A program made the position numbers and the translations under genes. From Heteronotia binoei (taxonomy: Eukaryota): DNA of 64,000 nucleotides. Of the stretch, positions 1 through 8,900 are shown piece after piece. The stretch lies in assembly GCF_032191835.1 (NCBI RefSeq), contig NC_083239.1, positions 20,708,001 to 20,772,000 on the forward strand. Direction: 5' to 3'. The notes below the pieces were generated by a model. It was not told the DNA's origin, did no database searches, and saw only the letters and a program-made list of their open reading frames with translations. Positions within the stretch are counted from its first letter, which is position 1. Each line of letters opens with the position of its first letter.

Positions 1-1563
1 CCCCTGCCTGTTTATGTAAAAGACAGTGGCTACGTTGTCCGAGGTTACCTGGACATGGGAGTTCTGTAGAGATGGAAGGAATAACCTCAGAGCTCTGTGG
101 ACCGCAAGAAGCTCTAGGCAGTTGATATGGAGCGAGCTTTCGTAGTTCGTCCATTTGCCTTGGACTGTGAAGGCTCCCAAGTGGGCTCCCCATCCCCACT
201 TGGAAGCGTCTGTGGTGACGATCATGGAGGGAGGTGCCTGTTTGAATGGCATTCCCACAGAGAGGTGACGTTGTATCGTCCACCATCTTAGGGATGGGAT
301 GATGTGAGACGGAAGAGTCAGTAATATGGACTGATGCTGCCTCTGAGGGTGGAAAGTCCTGATAAACCATAGTTGTAGAGGGCGCATGTGGAGCTTTGCA
401 AAGCAGAGGACTGCAGTGGTGGCTGCCATTAGACCCAGCATTTTCTGGTAGACGAGTGCTGTTTGGCAGCGGTGAGCAATAATTGTGTTGGCTAGAGATT
501 GGATGCTGTGTATTCTGTCTTGAGGTAGAGAAGCTGTTTGGGAGACCGTAGAAATATTTGCTCCTATGAACTGTATTGATTGAGTTGGGGTCAACTTGGA
601 CTTTGCTGTGTTGACTTGGAGGCCGAGGGTGGCTAGAAGAGAAAGAGTGGTGGAGACGTCCAGTTGGAGTTGTTCCCTTGTGGGGGAAACGATCAGCCAG
701 TCGTCTATGTAAGGAAAAATTGATATTTTTCGTTGACGCAGGGTTGCGGCCACCACCGCCATACATTTGGTGAAAACTCTCGGCGCCGTCGAGAGACCGA
801 AAGGGAGAGAGCGGAATTGGAAATGTTGATTTCCGATGGCGAACCTCAGAAACCTTCTGTGGTGGTGAGTGATTGTTATGTGGAAATATGCATCCTGTAA
901 GTCTATCGATGCCATCCAGGCTTGTTCTGGGATAAGAGGCAGGATTGACTGAAGGGTGATCATGCGGAATTTCTTGTAGGTGATATGCAGATTGAGTTTG
1001 CGGAGATCGAGGATAGGACGGAGTCCCCCGTCTCTTTTCGGCACCAGAAAGTAGCGGGAGTAGAATCCGGTACGATGATACTGGGGCGGTACCGGTTCTA
1101 TCGCACCCTTGTCCAGCAAGGAGGAGATTTCCGCTTGAAGAGGTACGGAAGGTGGTGTGGTGATGAATCTGTGATGTTTTGGGGTGGATCTGAATTCTAT
1201 TGTATAACCCCTGTGGATGATGGCGAGGACCCATGAGTCCGATGTTATGGACTCCCACTTGGGGTAAAAGGGTAGGAGACGGATGTCTGAGTGATGATGT
1301 GGCTGAAGCAGAATGTCTGGACGTCTTAGAGGGGTAGGGGAGTCAAAGAGACTGTTTGGTGGTAGGAGTGGTCTTCTTTGATGTTTGTGGGCGAGCCCTT
1401 TGTTGATAGAGCTGTTTGGATTGAGGAGGCTTACGTTTCCAAGCTTCTGGTTGTCTAGGAGATCTTGAGCTTTTATAGTAGTAAGGTCTCCAATTTCTTT
1501 GCTTGGCAAGGTGAGGTTGAGGCTGAGTGACTCCCAGTCTCTTGGCTCTCTTACGGCTATCGT
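1..1563 (-). CDS. DIRS ORF2 (reverse transcriptase + RNase H), open to the window edge, missing from the ORF track
   Basis: Hand translation shows no stop from 1563 to 1: WESITSDSWVLAIIHRGY, GFYSRYFLVPKRDGGLRPILDLR, SIDLQDAYFHI, LPFGLSTAPRVFTK, FPYIDDWL, then RNase H TTDASKWGWG, HINCLELLAV, SDNVATVFYINRQG. First in-frame ATG is at 963, inside the RT domain. Confidence 0.93.
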
Positions 1564-3553
1564 CTACATTGGTGAGGATGTCGTCTGTGGTGGCATTAAA
1601 CAGTCCAAGACCATCGAAGGGAAGGTCCTCAATTTTAAACTTAATATCTGGTTGGAGCGAAGAGGATCTGAGCCAGGCATGCCTGCGTAGAGCTATGGCC
1701 GAGGCTAAAGTTCTGGATGAACATTGAGCAGCATGGCATGCTGTGTTAATTTGTTGCTTGCACACTCTGGCAATCTCTTGCAGGGCATTGGTAGCTGGTT
1801 TCTGTGTCTCTTCCGGCAAGGAAGGGATCAGAGTGTTGAGATATGAAGTCAGGTTAAATGTATAGGCTGAGAAATATGCCATGCAGTTATGGATTTTAGT
1901 CGTGGCAGTGGTAAGGGAGTAAATCTTCCTCCCGATGGTGTCTAGTTTCTTGCCTTCCTTCTCCGGAGGCACAGGGTGTCTGGTTTGCTTGGATTTAGAG
2001 GAGGAATGAACTATCATAGAGTTCGGTGCAGGGTGGTTGAACAGAAACTTAGATTCTGGAGCATGGACCTTGTAGAGTGCCTCAACTCTTTTGGAGGTTG
2101 GTGGTACCGATGCCGGCTTGTCCCAGGCTTCCTTGAGAGTCTCTAGGTGAACGGGAAGCATGGGAAAGGATGAGCCAGCAGGGAGGTCAGCATTCACTAG
2201 GTCGTATACAACGTCAGAGACTCTAGGGGCATCAGAGGTGAGTTTAATATTAAGCGAGTTGGCCATATTAGCCAAAAGGTCCAGGTAGGATTTAGGACCT
2301 TCAGAAGGCGACAGTTCTGCCGGCTTGGCTATGTCAGAAAGTGGAGAGTGAGGGTCCGAATTCGAAGAATGAGAAGAGTCGGATTGCTCGGCTTCGGAGT
2401 CGATATCGGGTTCGATATCGGGTTCGTCTCGAGGTTTGGCCGGAGGTTCTAGGGTAGGAGGCTGTTTCTTTGAAGCCGAAGAAGTGGACCTCGCTGGAGA
2501 CGTCGGTATGGGTTTAGAAATGTAGCGAGCCGATTCTTCTCTGTGTCGAGGTCGTTCGTCATAGCAAAGGTAACGTTTGTGAGGAGAGTAATCGTAGTAT
2601 CGGTCTCGATGATCTCTGTAGACTCGATCATGGCGTCGAGGAGAGTCTTGTCGGAAATCATCACGGTACCTAGGCTCCGCCCGACAATAAGGATCTAGAG
2701 AGGGAGATCTTCGAAGTCTCCGACGGTCCCGGGGAGACGGCAATCTGGACCTCGATCTGGACCTCGAAGGGGAATAGTAGTAATAACGTTCCCTATGGTG
2801 GCTTCGGGATCGTTGTGTTCGCTGACGGAGTGGTACATCCTTAGGAGTCAAGGGTTCTCTGGTCAGGGAAAGGGCCGACAGAGGTTGCAGAGGTACTTCA
2901 CGGAAGGAGCGTCCATCGAGAGTATTGAGACGCTGGCTTTTAGGTGAGTCAATGTCCAGTATTTTCTCCGGTGGAGAGCCGTGGATAGAAGGCGATTTAG
3001 ACGACATACGGACTATCTCGAGCGGCGTAATGGCAGGGGTCGAAGTCGATTTCGAGCCCGGCAAGATAGGAATCGAGACGTTGGAGGTTGTCATCGGGTT
3101 CGAAGTCGAAGGCCTCGAGTCGGAAGGCTTGTGAACGGTCTTAGACTTCTTCGCTGTTTTAAGGCCGGTCGAATCCGAATGAGTCGAATCGGAACGATGG
3201 CGCTTTTTGGGGTCATCCGATTTTTTAGGATGTTTTCCGGACTTAAGCTTGCAGGGAACCTGAGCCACGGAAGCTGCCGGCTGCGCCGCTCCCGTAGTAG
3301 TTAGGGAAGCTGGCGTAGATTGGTGGGCCGCGTGAGACATATCTGGTCTAAGGGAGGATTCCAGGAGATGGCTCTTAAGCCGCGCGGTGCGGTTTTTACG
3401 GGCTTGCTTGCCGAACTGAATGCAGTGATGGCAGGAGTCCGTATGATGCGCCTCGCCGAGGCAGAAAAGGCACAAGGAATGTCCGTCAGAAGAGGGGATT
3501 TTAGCAGAGCAGCGAACGCAGAGTTTGAAGGTGATTTTGTCTCTTCCTTCCAT
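1343..3553 (-). CDS. DIRS ORF1 (gag-like, 736 aa): N-terminal PHD-like Cys/His finger, Arg/Ser-rich middle, LAP2alpha-like C-terminal region
   Basis: ORF track. Motif CVRC-x9-H-x2-C-x2-CLG-x2-H-x4-C-x2-C; RSPSRSRSRS tract; C-terminal LRRHAWLR...DLPFDGLGLF typical of vertebrate DIRS gag. Confidence 0.9.
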   Translation of the reverse strand: MEGRDKITFKLCVRCSAKIPSSDGHSLCLFCLGEAHHTDSCHHCIQFGKQARKNRTARLKSHLLESSLRPDMSHAAHQSTPASLTTTGAAQPAASVAQVPCKLKSGKHPKKSDDPKKRHRSDSTHSDSTGLKTAKKSKTVHKPSDSRPSTSNPMTTSNVSIPILPGSKSTSTPAITPLEIVRMSSKSPSIHGSPPEKILDIDSPKSQRLNTLDGRSFREVPLQPLSALSLTREPLTPKDVPLRQRTQRSRSHHRERYYYYSPSRSRSRSRLPSPRDRRRLRRSPSLDPYCRAEPRYRDDFRQDSPRRHDRVYRDHRDRYYDYSPHKRYLCYDERPRHREESARYISKPIPTSPARSTSSASKKQPPTLEPPAKPRDEPDIEPDIDSEAEQSDSSHSSNSDPHSPLSDIAKPAELSPSEGPKSYLDLLANMANSLNIKLTSDAPRVSDVVYDLVNADLPAGSSFPMLPVHLETLKEAWDKPASVPPTSKRVEALYKVHAPESKFLFNHPAPNSMIVHSSSKSKQTRHPVPPEKEGKKLDTIGRKIYSLTTATTKIHNCMAYFSAYTFNLTSYLNTLIPSLPEETQKPATNALQEIARVCKQQINTACHAAQCSSRTLASAIALRRHAWLRSSSLQPDIKFKIEDLPFDGLGLFNATTDDILTNVDDSRKRAKRLGVTQPQPHLAKQRNWRPYYYKSSRSPRQPEAWKRKPPQSKQLYQQRARPQTSKKTTPTTKQSL

Positions 3554-4348
3554 CCGCCCGGAGGGAAAGGAGGGGAAGGGGGGGGGGTAGGGAAGGAAAA
3601 GACCGAAATAGCAAGGCCTTTTTTTTTTTTAATACGATACCAGAAGAAGTAAAGTGAAGAAGCTGAAGAAAGCTGGAAAGGAACGTTGAAGGTAGATTGC
3701 GATGAAAAAGCAGGAGACTCAACGAGGTAGGTATGATCCGGACGGCGGTAAAAAAGAAACTGAGTGGGCTAGCGCCTCCCCCTCGTCCAGGAATGCGCAG
3801 ACGGTGCCTCCTCCCCAGGACGAGGAGAAGGCGCGCCAAATTTAACGCTTAAAGATTGCTTTGAATTCTCCGAGGTCGGGCCCGATCCTGCGGATTACCC
3901 ATATGTGGGACTGCACAGAGACCACAATGAAGATCCTCAAATTAAGCAATCGTCCTCCAGTTTCACATGGAGCTGTTTCCTTTTAACAGCTGGAGCCCCA
4001 AGAAAAGATCTCCCTTTCCAATCTGAAGCACTACAGTTATGCTACTCGACAGTATCTCCCAACCATGGAGAAGCTGCTGCAATAGGGCTAAAATACTTAT
4101 GCCAATTTAAGAAAATTCTGTGAGGTTTGCAGATGGGGGAGGGGGTCCTGCCACTCATTAGGGATGGCACTGCTGCCAGTCTAACTGCTACAGGCCATAG
4201 AACCTCTGAGCTCCAGAACTAGTTCATACTCTTGCCTTTGAAACAGGTTTAACTGCAGGTTGAAATGCCTGTCAGTGTGTCTGACAACCAACAAAGAACC
4301 ACCAGCATACTTATCTAGAGAAAAAAGTCAGCTCCCATATGATCTTAA

Positions 4349-5910
4349 GGCGAACTATCGGCCGGTGTCAAACCTTCCCTTCCTGGGTAAGGTCATAGAG
4401 CGGGCGGTGGCGACTCAGCTGCAGGGATTCCTGGAGGACACTTCCGCACTGGATCCATTCCAGTCCGGCTTTCGGCCAGGTCACGGGACGGAGACAGTTC
4501 TGGTCGCCCTCATGGATGATCTTATGCGACATCTGGATCAGGGCGGCTCTGCAGTGCTGCTGTTATTAGATCTGTCAGCCGCTTTTGACACGGTTGACCA
4601 CCAGCTACTGACTGACCGCCTCACCGATGTGGGGATACAGGGATCTGCCTTGCAGTGGCTGACTTCCTTTCTCCAAGATCGGGGACAAAGGGTGGTGATA
4701 GGGGAGGAAGCATCCCAGAGGCACTCCCTTAGTTGCGGGGTGCCGCAGGGAGCGGTCCTATCCCCGATGCTATTTAATATCTATATGCGCCCCCTTGCCC
4801 AGATTGTCAGGAGGTATGGACTGGGTTGCCATCAATATGCGGATGACACCCAGCTCTACCTAATGATGGGTGGCCAGTCTGACTGTACCCTGGAAAATCT
4901 AGACCTGGCATTACAAGCCGTGGCCTCCTGGCTCAGACTAAGTCGGCTGAAATTGAATCCGACGAAGACGGAGGTTCTCTACCTGGGTCGGGGCGGTCCG
5001 GGGAGAGAGATCCAGCTGCCGGCCCTTGATGGGGTGCCACTAATACCGGTCCCCAAGGTCAAGAGCTTAGGCGTGCTCCTTGAGTCCTCCCTTACAATGG
5101 AGGCTCAGGTGGCAGCCACTGTTAGATCTGCCTTTTTCCATCTTCGGCAAGCATGGCAGCTGGCCCCTTACCTGGACCGCAGCGACCTAGCGACGGTAAT
5201 CCATGCTACGGTCACCTCAAGAATAGATCACTGTAATGCTCTCTACATGGGGCTACCCCTGACGCTAACCCGGAGACTACAACTAGTGCAGAACGCTGCG
5301 GCACGGCTGTTAATGGGGCTACCACGACGGGAGCACATTCGGCCAGTGCTGAGAGAGCTGCACTGGTTGCCTGTTGTGTTCCGAGTTCGCTTCAAGGTGT
5401 TGGTATTAACCTTTAAAGCCCTTTATGGTCAGGGACCTGCCTATCTACGGGACCGCCTTTCCCCATATATCCCCCAGAGAGCACTGCGATCAGGGACAAA
5501 AAATCTGCTGTCTGCCCCTGGCCCAAAAGAAGCCAGGCTATGCGCAACAAGATCTAGGGCCTTCTCGGTGGCAGCACCAGAACTCTGGAACACCCTCCCA
5601 GAAGCTATAAGGGCCCTGCGGGATTTGTCGGTGTTCCGCAGGGCCTGTAAGACCGAACTGTTTAGACAGGCTTTTCTGGTTGACTGAAAATGGGCTGCCA
5701 CCGGACATCCTACAGAAGCTGGTGGTCATAGTCAGAACCGAATACCGCCAGACTGAATTGAGATAGCGTGATAGTTTTAAACTGATAAATGTATTATGGT
5801 TTTATATGTTTTATGGAATTGATTGTTTTTATGATACTGTAAGCCGCCCTGAGTCCGCTTGCGGAGAGGGCGGGATATAAATGCAAAGTAATAAATAAAT
5901 AAATAAATAA
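4349..5910 (+). mobile_element. L2-clade LINE, 5'-truncated, RT C-terminal half uninterrupted to the stop at 5687, (TAAA)n tail
   Basis: ORF 4260..5687 (first ~30 aa are flanking DNA) has QSGFRPGHGTET, LLDLSAAFDTVDH, GVPQGAVLSP, QYADDTQLY, LHWLPV, LWNTLP. 3' end CTGTAAGCCGCCCTGAG...(TAAA)n. Homology to the second copy starts at 4349. Confidence 0.93.
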
Positions 5911-8900
5911 GGACAGGCAGCGGGAGAAAAGCTGAGCAATCAATCTTTTCCACTGTGGAGGAAGATGTCATTTAACAAAATCAACTTAAATTATCATTTA
6001 AACGTTTACACATCAACAATATCTAAGCCATATTCATATTCTAACACATCATTCTACTACTAACTTTTAAAGAAAAATTAACATTTCAGTCTTATGCGCA
6101 GATGGTTAATAATAAGACTAGCATTGGAAAATACTCACCACACAAGCAAAGACAATCCTAGAACACACAGGTAACCCTTTTCCAAACCTTGGAAAATGTT
6201 TACAGCTATATATAAACAGTAAATACAACTTTTACTGTTTAAACACTGAAAAGTTCAGAGTTACCTTCAAGATCCCATATAAAGTGTAGAGGGGATTCAG
6301 AGTCAGGAGAACCTCACAGTGACCAAATACACTCATATTTAAGGAGGTTTTTGCAATAAAATATAAAGACCGAGGGCGGGGGGAAGGACAAATGATTTTT
6401 CTGGGGGGTTTTTTCCAAGTTTTTTTTCACTTCCCCAAACATGTAACTAATTTTTTGCACAATATTTATTTACAAGATATTTATCCCACATTTCTGCCCA
6501 ATCAGGACCACCTAATACGCTATGCGTACAATATACTGAAGAGTTTTCAATGTTTGAAGTTCAACCTGATATTGAAACATGTAGCTGGCTATTAACTGTG
6601 TGAGACTGTTTTTGGACAGATAAATGCATTTTCTTGTTACTTTGAAATGCAATTTTTTGCTATCTGAGAGCAAGAAAAAAAGAAAGATACATGTGCTAAG
6701 GAAATGGTGCAGCAGTCCACATCTGTCTTTCTTTAGTACTAGGCATACTTCTGCTTGTAGGATACTTAGGCATTCAATTTTAAATTTTATAAATATGCCA
6801 AAGAGTACAATTTGACAGGCTAATTAAGCCATACACGATACGTTTTATGGTGTAACACCAATAAAATAAAGAAAATATTGCTTATATTTCAATTTTTTTA
6901 CATGGTTTCTACATTTCTAGAACTTTTACATCTCTACTTTTTTCCATGATTCTTTTTTTCAGTGTTGAGGGGTATCAGCAGATGTCCACACCCAGCACTG
7001 CACCTAAGGTATCTTTGCCATTTTCTGTTGGCCCAAATAACTGTTCTGTTCAGGATAATAATTCACCGCACCAAGCACACAATCCCCCTTAAAAACATGT
7101 GGGACAGTGGGCCTTATAAAGGCTAATTAAGGGCTAGGAGAGTAACAGTCTAGAGCAAAGCCTGCCCCACCCATGTAAGCACTCAGCCCACATTCCATTC
7201 TCTCCTGCCTGCACTTCCCAAACAAGCTTATGACACTGGAGAGACCAGCCCAGATGATCCAAGAGACAGCAGAAGCACAAGATTATTAGCAGGGCATTTG
7301 CAGGTAGTGAATAGGAAGGAAAGATGACCTAAAGCCACCAAGCCCCTCTCAGAGGGTCTGCCAGTAAGTCATTCTGCTAGTTAAGAGAGATATATTTCAA
7401 GTATATCTATGCTGTCAGCATAATCTGATGTACAAAGTGTGTCACTGACTAGAATACCTCATATTCAAACCAGTGAATAGGCATGACTGTGCCCACATGC
7501 TATGATTCCACAGTAATTCAGAATGTACTTCCACATTCAGAGTGACCTTTCCTTTTATAGTTTCCAGCCATTCAAGCTTCAAAGCATGTGGGCAGCACCT
7601 ACTGAAGCATTCTATGCTTTCATTAGTTCAGGGTCCTCCAATAATTATAATTATGCTGCTGTACAGCAGGTGTTCTTAAACATGCCTGTGCACATGCGCA
7701 CACACAACCAATCAAGAGATATCCCATCAACCCACAATGGATTACTATAGCATTGTACCTCTGGTGCAGCAAACACCACTGCAGACAACCTCACAACACA
7801 AGAGCATACATGGAATGTGCCCCTTCTCTGACCAAGCCAGTTTGTAAACAAGGAAATAAAAGAAAAGCATTTTGCTATCTAGGAAGTCAAGCTATTGCTA
7901 TAAATGGCCTTTTCACATGTTGGTTAAACTGCTCCCCCAGCATCACAACAGGTGTCAGATGCCAAAGTCCTGACACTGTGTTCTCTCAACACAAGCAACT
8001 CAGAGTGACGAAGCTCAATGAGGATACAGACAAGGCCAAATCACACTACGTGACTGCACTATAGGTTACATTGGGTGGTACCTATCACCAGGACTAGGGG
8101 AGAAACAGCATTACAAAGTCTTAAAAACGAAGTATCCAAGCAGCTGTAATTTTTCCAGCCTTTCCATATCATCCAATATGAATGAGTGGGGTTTTGACAG
8201 ACTCCATGAATATTTTGACAACAGCACCACAGCAAGAGAAATGACAGCCAGAGGGCTGTCAGACTAGAGGCTGCCCAATCCTGGAGCAATTTAACTGGCA
8301 CTTACTTGTTCCAGCTGGATGCAGCAATTTGGGTTCTGATAAGTGTTAAGACAATAGGGCTTACCCCCACAGAAATTCAGAGTGCAGAACCATAACCACC
8401 CTCATTGCAGATTATTTATTAAAATATCTATAGCTCACTTTTGCTCTGGCTCAAGGCAACTATGTTATGATGTTGCTGATGAATCAGGATTTTCAGGTGG
8501 GAACAGAAGTGTAAGCTATATGTCACTAGACTTTTCTTGGCTATTTAGATTTGTCATACAGGCATTAATCCAGGCTCTCTCAGTGTTTTCCCATGAGACC
8601 TCCCTTCTAATTCCCAAACACGGAGGAGATATTACCTGCAGTATGGGAGACAATACAGACAGAAAGGATTGTTTTAAGTTCTAAACTTGTTGCCAAATTA
8701 GTCTGTTGCAGAAAGTAAGGGGACGGGGAGCCTTCTGGCATTCTAAAGCACTAACAGATTTACTGTGAATTACCACATTACATAGGTAAGTTTGCTAGTC
8801 TTTAAAATGCCAGATTACTGCAGTTTTACAGCTGTTATAAGTCTCATTAGAAGACTTTATGAAGTGCTTTATAAAAAGATATAGTACTACTGCTATATGC

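What the first reader, a model, noticed from the sequence alone, without database searches (positions are those of the whole stretch)
1342..1348. CUU-UGA-C shifty stop links DIRS gag to an AUG-less pol by a +1 frameshift
Seen: ORF1 ends ...CAG UCU CUU UGA C. ORF2 is in the +1 frame and reads ...CUC UUU GAC across the same bases, so tRNA-Leu slipping from CUU to UUU lands in pol. The pol frame is open from 1563 but has no AUG until 963, well inside the RT domain, and DIRS-typical pol motifs begin only ~25 codons after the gag stop. Established: CUU-UGA-C is the +1 site of bacterial prfB; antizyme uses a P-site codon plus UGA; Ty1 uses CUU-AGG-C. Inference: this DIRS makes a Gag-Pol fusion (736 aa plus at least 448 codons in the window) by stop-codon-dependent +1 recoding. 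I am not aware of this being described for vertebrate DIRS elements.
Basis: partly seen in the sequence, partly recalled or inferred. Interest (0 to 1): 0.85.

Follow-up and report, generated by a model that had tools for sequence, protein, structure and literature searches.

The report
DIRS gag stop: frameshift-and-readthrough branch point
The stop codon that ends the gag gene of this DIRS retrotransposon sits exactly where two further reading frames begin (reverse transcriptase in +1, tyrosine recombinase in frame), an arrangement kept in about 60 related elements from reptiles, fish and aquatic metagenomes, so it very probably is a programmed recoding site, which gives a testable answer to how these elements make their enzymes.

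Summary
On the minus strand an intact 736-codon gag ORF (3553-1343) ends CAG TCT CTT TGA C. The RT/RNase H frame is +1, runs to the window edge, and has no ATG before 963.

Comparison supports a +1 shift at this stop.
- In 11 of 11 named reptile, turtle and fish elements pol is +1, the stop is TGA, and the last codon is NTT (8) or NCC (3).
- In 53 of 62 metagenomic DIRS-like loci pol is also +1.
- Over 62 unique junctions the stop is TGA 54, TAG 8, TAA 0. The next base is C in 37.
- Substitution phase switches from the gag frame to the +1 frame within about 30 nt of the stop.

The gag frame also stays open past the stop: 447 codons here and about 990 in complete relatives. It ends in the tyrosine recombinase, with zero stops where synonymous shuffles expect 13-36. 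So the same stop is probably also read through.

YUU is clade-specific, not universal, and a few lineages use other offsets. No RNA or protein data were available. Other notes of this scan record the same site in other copies in this genome. I found no published description.

The parts
3554..3940 (-). 5' leader including the left terminal inverted-repeat region of the element (approximate limits)
   Evidence: this stretch (3753-3940 in window coordinates) matches the Heteronotia locus L005 in both orientations, at the two ends of that copy, as expected for DIRS inverted terminal repeats. The outer boundary was not mapped.
1343..3553 (-). gag ORF, 736 codons plus TGA, intact
   Evidence: Weak LAP2alpha hit typical of DIRS gag. 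Relatives found in geckos, Anolis, Pogona, a cordylid and turtles.
1349..1357 (-). AAA CAG TCT, the conserved Lys-Gln-x codons just 5' of the shift codon
   Evidence: Gag ends K/R-Q/R-x-[LVFI] in many relatives. The third positions vary synonymously (AAA/AAG, CAG/CAA), so conservation is at the peptide level in the gag frame.
1342..1348 (-). CTT TGA C: proposed recoding site (P-site CUU, A-site UGA, 3' C)
   Evidence: It is the most conserved block within +/-150 nt among four gecko-lineage elements whose gag proteins are only 42-51% identical to the window's.
1345..1563 (-). stretch upstream of the stop where the +1 frame is also open (73 codons); not evidence of coding
   Evidence: composition explains it, P = 0.34; the +1 translation here is not conserved against L005, the gag translation is; substitutions here show the gag-frame signature.
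1..1347 (-). pol ORF in the +1 frame (slip codon TTT 1347-1345, then GAC...), 448 codons, cut by the window edge
553..1044 (-). reverse transcriptase domain (RVT_1)
   Evidence: residues 102-265 of the +1 translation, E 4.8e-24.
22..225 (-). RNase H domain (RT_RNaseH)
   Evidence: residues 375-442, E 1.1e-05.
1..1342 (-). continuation of the gag frame behind the TGA, 447 codons with no stop, overlapping pol; this is the 5' part of the recombinase (YR) ORF and is cut by the window edge
   Evidence: 0 stops observed against 12.8 expected under synonymous shuffles of pol, 0 of 2000 shuffles as low. In complete relatives this frame runs 956-1142 codons and ends in a tyrosine recombinase.

Best explanation
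The element is a young DIRS1-type tyrosine-recombinase retrotransposon. Its full-length RNA is translated from the gag AUG. The gag stop codon (CUU UGA C) is a programmed branch point with three outcomes. Most ribosomes terminate and make Gag. A fraction shift +1 while the poorly recognised UGA-C sits in the A site, with peptidyl-tRNA-Leu moving from CUU to UUU and the next codon read being GAC. These ribosomes make Gag-Pol (RT, RNase H, methyltransferase). Another fraction decode the UGA and continue in the gag frame through a roughly 650-codon spacer that overlaps pol, reaching the tyrosine recombinase and making Gag-YR. Shown here: the anatomy, its conservation, the place where the coding signature changes frame, and selection that keeps the gag frame free of stops across pol. 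Inferred: that the ribosome, and not splicing or internal initiation, makes the frame changes; the tRNA-slippage detail; and the proportions of the three products.
For: The anatomy is intact in this copy and in several relatives.
- Gag and pol are both intact here. Gag and at least the RT-RNase H part of pol are also intact in Hemicordylus L006 and Pogona L007; in Anolis sagrei L008 that part of pol is intact but gag is broken. All have the same +1 offset.
- All 11 named vertebrate junctions have TGA and pol in +1. The last codon is CTT in 5, TTT in 2, ATT in 1, TCC in 2 and ACC in 1. The fish site TCC TGA T is identical to the mammalian antizyme site as I recall it.

The wider survey agrees.
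- Of 62 metagenomic loci with an upstream ORF, 53 have pol in +1.
- Of 62 unique junctions, 54 have TGA, 8 TAG and 0 TAA. The next base is C in 37.
- NUU or NCC last codons occur in 19 of 51, against a 14% background (p = 4e-5).
- 30 of 45 gag representatives end in L, V, F or I.

Pol has no usable start of its own. There is no ATG in the pol frame before the RT domain here, and none at all before the conserved pol match in 17 of 51 relatives.

Substitution phase in 12 element pairs localises the frame switch.
- Upstream of the stop the signature is gag-frame. From +30 nt onward it is +1-frame (Fisher p = 0.004).
- The 30 nt after the stop are the most conserved bin.
- After the pol stop the signature returns to the gag frame.

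Readthrough is supported by the frame-0 ORF.
- The gag frame is open 956-1142 codons after the stop in 35 complete loci, and at least 440 codons in 13 more.
- It has 0 stops where 13-36 are expected, in each of 7 elements tested.
- Its first ATG lies anywhere from 1 to 550 codons downstream.
- Its C-terminal part is a tyrosine recombinase.
Against: There is no RNA, ribosome-profiling or peptide evidence: no sequencing run was listed for this genome. No stimulatory RNA structure was found 3' of the stop (z = -0.32, mean z = -0.69 against -1.04 in a control region). In many non-reptile clades the last codon (CAA, CAG, AAA, AAG, AGA, CAC...) cannot re-pair in +1, so simple slippage is not general and another mechanism, or another nearby site, may operate there. 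Seven loci appear to have pol in +2 and two in frame 0, although some automatic calls are unreliable (L025 and L028 are near-identical yet were called differently). The identity of the gag and YR frames would also follow from +1 and then -1 shifts, so only the stop-free overlap argues specifically for readthrough.
Confidence: 0.6

Rival explanations
1. Only the +1 frameshift at the gag stop is real. The recombinase is reached some other way: a second shift back at the end of pol giving Gag-Pol-YR, reinitiation, or its own start. The gag stop is not read through.
For: The +1 evidence is as above. The identity of the gag and YR frames is automatic if pol is +1 and YR is -1 relative to pol. The overlapped frame-0 stretch shows no amino-acid-level constraint of its own (the pattern in the RT region is a pure +1 signature).
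Against: This does not explain why the gag/YR frame is kept free of stops over all 450-730 pol codons (0 observed against 13-36 expected, 0 of 2000 shuffles, in 7 elements). It also does not explain why that frame is open from the gag stop even where its first ATG lies 150-550 codons downstream, nor why TAA is never used.
Confidence: 0.15
2. There is no ribosomal frameshift. Pol (and YR) are translated from a spliced or subgenomic RNA, or by internal or non-AUG initiation (for example the UUG near 1509). The conserved frame relation reflects other constraints.
For: Nothing here shows the ribosome changing frame. 34 of 51 relatives do have some ATG in the +1 frame upstream of the conserved pol part. 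Some gene models join the gag N-terminus to pol through predicted introns (P0198).
Against: The gag tail and linker vary greatly in length and sequence, yet the offset stays +1 in 85% of loci and the stop type and context are constrained. 17 of 51 relatives, and this window, have no ATG at all in the relevant stretch. The +1 stretch upstream of the stop shows the gag-frame signature and not a pol-frame one, so a start at about 1509 would add an unconserved peptide. The intron-bridged gene models sit on frame breaks and are probably prediction artefacts.
Confidence: 0.13
3. A +1 shift does occur, but not on CUU_UGA. It occurs at another site nearby, upstream in the overlap or a few codons downstream in ribosomes that have read through.
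For: The last codon varies widely between clades. The phase test only localises the switch to about +/-30 nt.
Against: The stop and its last codon form the most conserved block of the region. NUU and NCC last codons are enriched. Gag-frame peptide conservation runs right up to the stop. A shift after readthrough would multiply two small efficiencies.
Confidence: 0.1
4. The frame offset is decay (an indel in a dead copy), and CTT TGA C is a chance match to the prfB motif.
For: Many copies in other genomes are decayed (L001, L002, L003, L004, L009, L010).
Against: Both ORFs are intact here. The same offset, stop and position recur in about 60 independent elements.
Confidence: 0.01

Closest known systems
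Bacterial prfB (release factor 2) +1 frameshift site CUU UGA C
   Same: The heptamer is identical. The logic is the same: a shift-prone CUU in the P site, a slowly decoded UGA followed by C in the A site, and tRNA-Leu able to re-pair on UUU (established knowledge; sequence).
   Different: prfB depends on an upstream Shine-Dalgarno-like element and on RF2 autoregulation, neither of which exists in eukaryotes. Here the product is a retroelement polyprotein, and the zero frame is also open behind the stop.
Eukaryotic ornithine decarboxylase antizyme +1 frameshift (UCC UGA U)
   Same: A eukaryotic +1 shift on a sense codon plus UGA. The fish element L010 has exactly TCC TGA T, and Anolis elements have TCC or ACC TGA C. 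TCC is the commonest last codon in the metagenomic set.
   Different: Antizyme uses polyamine sensing and, in vertebrates, a 3' pseudoknot. No 3' structure was detected here. Antizyme has no zero-frame continuation.
Yeast Ty1 (CUU AGG C) and Ty3 (GCG AGU U) Gag-Pol +1 frameshifts
   Same: The purpose is the same (a Gag to Gag-Pol ratio set by a +1 shift), and Ty1 uses the same CUU P-site codon. Ty3 shows that +1 shifting can occur without re-pairing, which is relevant to DIRS clades ending in CAA, CAG or AAA.
   Different: The Ty sites pause on a rare sense codon, not on a stop. They are LTR elements of fungi.
Gammaretrovirus gag-UAG-pol, alphavirus and UGA-CUA type stop-codon readthrough
   Same: A single leaky stop separates gag from a long in-frame ORF. 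UGA followed by C is the leakiest context, and CTA, CTC or CTT follow the stop in 20 of 62 junctions.
   Different: MuLV needs a 3' pseudoknot, and none was detected here. Here the readthrough ORF is overprinted on pol for about 650 codons, and the enzyme reached is the recombinase, not RT.
Dictyostelium DIRS-1 and published DIRS1-like elements (three ORFs, long pol/YR overlap)
   Same: The element class and the overlap are the same. The held literature describes the long pol/YR ORF overlap (PMC3266345). [quoted passage not shown]
   Different: That suggestion concerns the YR/RT ORF pair of the amoeba element. I found no description of the gag stop as the shared entry point, of its sequence conservation, or of a gag-YR in-frame relation.
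Euplotes +1 frameshifting at AAA-UAA/UAG
   Same: A stop codon in the A site triggers +1 shifting after an A-rich codon. Several DIRS clades end in AAA or AAG plus TGA or TAG.
   Different: In the ciliate this is a genome-wide property linked to altered termination. Here it is a single site in a mobile element of animals.

Membership tests
DIRS1-like tyrosine-recombinase retrotransposon | Gag-like ORF1 (LAP2alpha-related domain in vertebrate DIRS) | tested here: met
   Intact 736-aa ORF. The LAP2alpha hit is weak (E 0.0099). The profile search finds 1742 relatives, the named ones from reptile genomes. Xenopus DIRS gag is reported to carry this domain (PMC9210276).
DIRS1-like tyrosine-recombinase retrotransposon | RT and RNase H, with no protease and no DDE integrase between gag and RT | tested here: met
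   RVT_1 and RT_RNaseH are present, and the RT motifs start about 100 codons after the junction with no other domain between.
DIRS1-like tyrosine-recombinase retrotransposon | Tyrosine recombinase ORF overlapping pol; methyltransferase domain | tested here: inconclusive
   The window ends inside pol, so YR and MT are not in the window. The overlapping open frame is present. In relatives the frame ends in a YR (Phage_int_SAM_1 at 24.4 bits; R...HxxR...Y conserved; weak Cre matches), and a weak Dam hit lies in pol.
DIRS1-like tyrosine-recombinase retrotransposon | Inverted terminal repeats and internal complementary region | tested here: inconclusive
   The left terminal region matches both ends of the Heteronotia copy in opposite orientations. 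The right end and the ICR lie outside the window.
Stop-codon-dependent programmed +1 ribosomal frameshift (prfB / antizyme kind) | Shift-prone sense codon directly followed by a stop, with the essential downstream ORF in +1 and lacking its own start | tested here: met
Stop-codon-dependent programmed +1 ribosomal frameshift (prfB / antizyme kind) | Conservation of site, stop and offset among diverged relatives | tested here: met
   11 of 11 named elements and 53 of 62 metagenomic loci. TGA 54, TAG 8, TAA 0. The frame switch lies within about 30 nt of the stop. The identity of the last codon is conserved only within clades.
Stop-codon-dependent programmed +1 ribosomal frameshift (prfB / antizyme kind) | Cis stimulators (5' element; 3' pseudoknot in vertebrate antizyme) | tested here: not met
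   There is no 3' structure above control. A conserved 5' Lys-Gln-x peptide or codon block exists, but its role is unknown.
Stop-codon-dependent programmed +1 ribosomal frameshift (prfB / antizyme kind) | Demonstrated trans-frame protein product | not testable with these tools
   No sequencing runs were listed, and no proteomic data are available.
Programmed stop-codon readthrough | Long conserved ORF in frame behind a single leaky stop | tested here: met
Programmed stop-codon readthrough | Readthrough-promoting context or 3' structure | tested here: inconclusive
   UGA-C is the commonest tetranucleotide (C at +4 in 37 of 62 junctions), and CTN follows the stop in 20 of 62. No 3' structure was found.
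Ty1-type +1 frameshift (sense 'hungry' codon) | Pause on a rare sense codon in the A site | tested here: not met
   The A-site codon is a stop in all +1 junctions.

The most novel reading that the evidence does not exclude
One stop codon works as a three-way translational switch: terminate, shift +1, or read through. This switch is conserved across DIRS1-like retrotransposons of animals and sets the Gag : Gag-Pol : Gag-recombinase ratio from a single unspliced RNA. The roughly 650-codon frame overprinted on pol is kept open only as a translated spacer, with no amino-acid constraint of its own.
Probability: 0.45. Interest if true: 0.85.

Novelty: new variant of a known kind. Interest (0 to 1): 0.72.

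Why it matters
How DIRS elements express RT and recombinase from their overlapping ORFs has been open since the founding element was sequenced. The held literature only says that a +1 frameshift is possible and undetermined (PMC5006619). This work pins the problem to a 7-15 nt site that can be put in a reporter. If confirmed, it would add a whole retroelement superfamily of vertebrates and invertebrates to the few eukaryotic cases of stop-dependent +1 frameshifting (antizyme, Euplotes). It would also be a case where the same stop codon feeds two different recoding events, which is useful for studying the competition between eRF1, near-cognate tRNAs and P-site slippage. There is a practical side too. 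Gene predictors currently bridge these junctions with false introns, or name gag fragments as host proteins. Knowing the rule allows correct annotation of DIRS elements.

Tried and rejected
- **Exact look-up of this gag protein:** not on record.
- **Sequencing runs:** two searches (whole element, and junction only, RNA) listed none. Read laying could therefore not be used, and neither copy-number variation nor expression was examined.
- **Pleurodeles (amphibian) locus:** the DNA could not be served, so no amphibian junction was seen.
- **Long +1-open overlap upstream of the stop as a sign of an upstream shift site:** rejected, because composition explains it and the substitution phase there is gag-frame.
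- **3' stimulatory RNA structure:** none in the window and none above control across 62 junctions.
- **Anolis L003 appeared to have a 991-codon +1 ORF with RT in yet another frame:** most simply explained by a small frame-breaking indel near 8485 in a decayed copy that swaps the two open frames. It is not a different architecture.
- **Gene models that fuse gag and pol (P0006, P0258, P0198):** the two examined (P0006, P0258) prove to be deletion derivatives or intron-bridged frame breaks; P0198 was seen only as protein.
- **Automatic junction calling is noisy:** L025 and L028 are near-identical yet were called differently, so the counts of 7 '+2' and 2 '0' loci are upper bounds.
- **Literature:** six full-text searches found no description. 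Goodwin and Poulter 2001 and Poulter and Butler 2015 are not held, so prior mention there cannot be excluded.
- **Consensus or repaired sequences:** none was built or used. The consensus lines that the alignment tool prints for proteins were not used to build any sequence.

Full report
**What is in the window.** On the minus strand, an intact ORF runs from ATG at 3553 to TGA at 1345-1343 (736 codons). Its product has the weak LAP2alpha-like signature of vertebrate DIRS gag (PMC9210276). The ORF ends ACC AAA CAG TCT CTT TGA C, so the coordinates given (1342-1348) are exactly CTT TGA C.

The +1 frame reads CTC TTT GAC over the same bases. It carries RVT_1 (E 4.8e-24) and RT_RNaseH. It is open from 1563 to the window edge, and its first ATG lies 127 codons after the junction, at 963. 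The window holds no second copy.

**Is the offset real or decay?** Both ORFs are intact here. The same arrangement recurs in other genomes.
- Gag relatives were found in geckos, Anolis, Pogona, a cordylid and turtles. I fetched DNA for ten loci.
- Junctions, written as last codons, [stop], next base:
  - window: CAG TCT CTT [TGA] C
  - Heteronotia L005 (intact gag): CAG TCT CTT [TGA] C
  - Logan contig L001: TCT CTT [TGA] T
  - Gekko L002: GGC CTT [TGA] C
  - Pogona L007: TAC CTT [TGA] C
  - Hemicordylus L006: TCT TTT [TGA] T
  - Macrochelys L009: AAT TTT [TGA] A
  - Anolis sagrei L008: CGC ATT [TGA] C
  - A. carolinensis L003: CGC TCC [TGA] C
  - A. carolinensis L004: CGT ACC [TGA] C
  - the carp Cirrhinus L010: TCA TCC [TGA] T

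- Pol is +1 in all eleven.
- In the four gecko-lineage elements, whose gag proteins are only 42-51% identical to the window's, CCAARCAGnnnCTTTGA is the best conserved block within +/-150 nt.
- Among 45 gag cluster representatives whose match reaches the C-terminus, 30 end in L, V, F or I, typically K/R-Q/R-x-[LVFI]. The Lys and Gln codons vary synonymously between species, so that conservation is in the gag frame, up to the very last codon.

**A wider sample.** A pol alignment pulled 80 DIRS-like contigs out of metagenomes.
- Of 62 with an upstream ORF of at least 100 codons ending near the pol start, pol is +1 in 53, +2 in 7 and in frame in 2.
- Pooling with the named loci gives 62 unique +1 junctions. 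The stop is TGA in 54, TAG in 8 and TAA in none. The following base is C in 37, G in 14, T in 8 and A in 3.
- Last codons of type NUU or NCC make up 19 of 51, against 14% of codons in the same ORFs (p = 4e-5).
- The rest are mostly CAA, CAG, AAA, AAG, AGA, CAC and AAC.
- On a pol tree the reptile/turtle elements form one group (8 rows: NUU in 6, NCC in 2). The last-codon class is clustered but changes many times across the tree.
- So +1 plus a leaky stop is the general rule. CUU/YUU is a clade feature.
- The exceptions include a long-branch lineage with the classic -1 heptamer A AAA AAG directly before TAG TAG (L055, L057, L059). Some automatic calls are unreliable (L025 against L028).

**Where does the frame change?** The 73-codon stretch upstream of the stop in which +1 is open is not evidence. 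The basic gag tail has few codons with T at position 2, and 34% of codon shuffles give no +1 stop.

A direct test is the phase of substitutions in 12 pairs of related elements.
- Upstream of the stop, the third position of the gag frame is the most variable.
- The first 30 nt after the stop are the most conserved bin at all three positions.
- From +30 nt onward, the third position of the +1 frame is the most variable (Fisher p = 0.004 for upstream against the first 90 nt downstream).
- In the RT region the pattern is a pure +1 signature (0.50, 0.23 and 0.15 at frame-0 positions 1, 2 and 3).

The switch is therefore within about 30 nt of the stop. Pol has no ATG before the RT domain here, and none at all in that stretch in 17 of 51 relatives. 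This is what a shift at the stop predicts.

I tested this.
- In the window the gag frame continues behind the TGA for 447 codons to the window edge without a stop. The third frame has dozens of stops.
- Across the 62 unique junctions, the gag frame is open 956-1142 codons (median 989) in 35 complete loci, and at least 440 codons up to the contig end in 13 more.
- The +1 ORF is 567-991 codons (median 690) in 47 loci. The third frame closes after a median of 16 codons.
- Synonymous shuffles of pol predict 13-36 stops in the gag frame. The observed number is 0 in each of seven elements (0 of 2000 shuffles each), while the third frame has the expected number.
- The part of this frame that lies beyond the pol stop shows a gag-frame coding signature. 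It is a tyrosine recombinase: Phage_int_SAM_1 at 24.4 bits, weak Phage_integrase, invariant R...HxxR...Y, and weak Cre matches on the catalytic segment.
- The first ATG in this frame lies anywhere from 1 to 550 codons after the gag stop, and beyond 150 codons in 16 of 58 elements.

A frame kept open for hundreds of codons with no start of its own, and with no amino-acid constraint of its own, is best explained by ribosomes entering from gag through the stop. The long pol/YR overlap is published (PMC3266345). I did not find the in-frame relation to gag, or the shared entry point, described.

**Mechanism.** I infer that UGA followed by C is decoded slowly by eRF1. While it waits, three outcomes compete.
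- Release gives Gag.
- A +1 movement of the peptidyl-tRNA followed by reading of GAC gives Gag-Pol. The movement is CUU to UUU here; NCC to CCU in Anolis and the carp, as in antizyme.
- Near-cognate decoding of UGA gives Gag-spacer-YR.

The absence of TAA, the excess of C at +4 and the frequent CTN after the stop fit both recoding events. No RNA structure stands out 3' of the stop. The only extra conserved feature is the Lys-Gln-x peptide block, which might act through the nascent chain; that is speculation. In clades ending in CAA, CAG or AAA, re-pairing is impossible. There a Ty3-like or Euplotes-like shift without re-pairing, or another nearby site, must be assumed.

**Limits.** Everything is comparative. 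No sequencing run was listed for this genome, so there is no evidence on transcripts, footprints or peptides. A spliced or subgenomic RNA cannot be excluded. Most metagenomic loci have no known host. No amphibian DNA could be fetched. Elements are related by descent, so counts are not independent events; the arguments that carry weight are the contrast with diverged flanks, the shuffles and the phase test.

**Novelty.** Six searches of the held literature gave no description of a programmed shift or readthrough at the DIRS gag stop. [quoted passage not shown] Two key subscription papers are not held. Several other notes of this scan record the same site in other copies of this genome. I rate the site as a new variant of known recoding kinds, resting on strong comparative evidence with no experimental test.

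Noticed in passing
window 4260-5684 (+): A 475-codon ORF with a strong RVT_1 hit (E 3.6e-38) lies just beyond the 5' end of the DIRS copy, on the other strand. It is another retroelement, probably a LINE. Its relation to the DIRS insertion was not examined.
   Followed up: partly
L055:2290-2330, L057, L059: A long-branch DIRS-like lineage in metagenome contigs has pol in the -1 frame. The classic slippery heptamer A AAA AAG lies directly before TAG TAG, and the pol frame opens only 2 codons upstream. This lineage switched to -1 frameshifting.
   Followed up: partly
L011, L025, L067, L082 (junctions): Four loci end gag with TCC, GCC or TTT followed by TAG CA, and appear to have pol in +2 after a long linker (170-670 nt). 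It is not resolved whether this is a real alternative arrangement or an artefact of indels or of the automatic call.
   Followed up: partly
L043:2700-2760, L075:1480-1510: Two loci have pol apparently in frame with gag behind a single TGA (L075: TGA CTA). L043 still carries an internal AAA CAG TCT TTT, where relatives have their gag end.
   Followed up: no
pol region of all complete elements, e.g. L007:5335-7220: The gag/YR frame overprinted on pol shows no amino-acid constraint of its own: its third position is the least variable, being the second position of pol. Yet it never acquires a stop. It looks like a translated spacer and not a protein domain.
   Followed up: yes
gag C-termini; window 1349-1357: Gag proteins of many reptile and turtle DIRS families end K/R-Q/R-x-[LVFI], with synonymous variation in the Lys and Gln codons. 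This suggests peptide-level selection on the last four residues next to the recoding site.
   Followed up: partly
P0002, P0003, P0004, P0010, P0082, P0168: Public gene models containing DIRS gag or pol are named as host proteins: prolactin-releasing peptide receptor-like, TAF1D, nucleolar and coiled-body phosphoprotein 1-like, proteoglycan 4-like, OTUD6B and RAD51 homolog 2. Some bridge the gag/pol frame break with predicted introns. These are annotation artefacts.
   Followed up: partly
L003:8480-8490; L033; L009: Copies in which the long open frame seems to jump to another frame are most simply explained by single frame-breaking indels inside pol that swap the two open frames. This is a useful diagnostic of decay in this dual-frame region.
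   Followed up: yes
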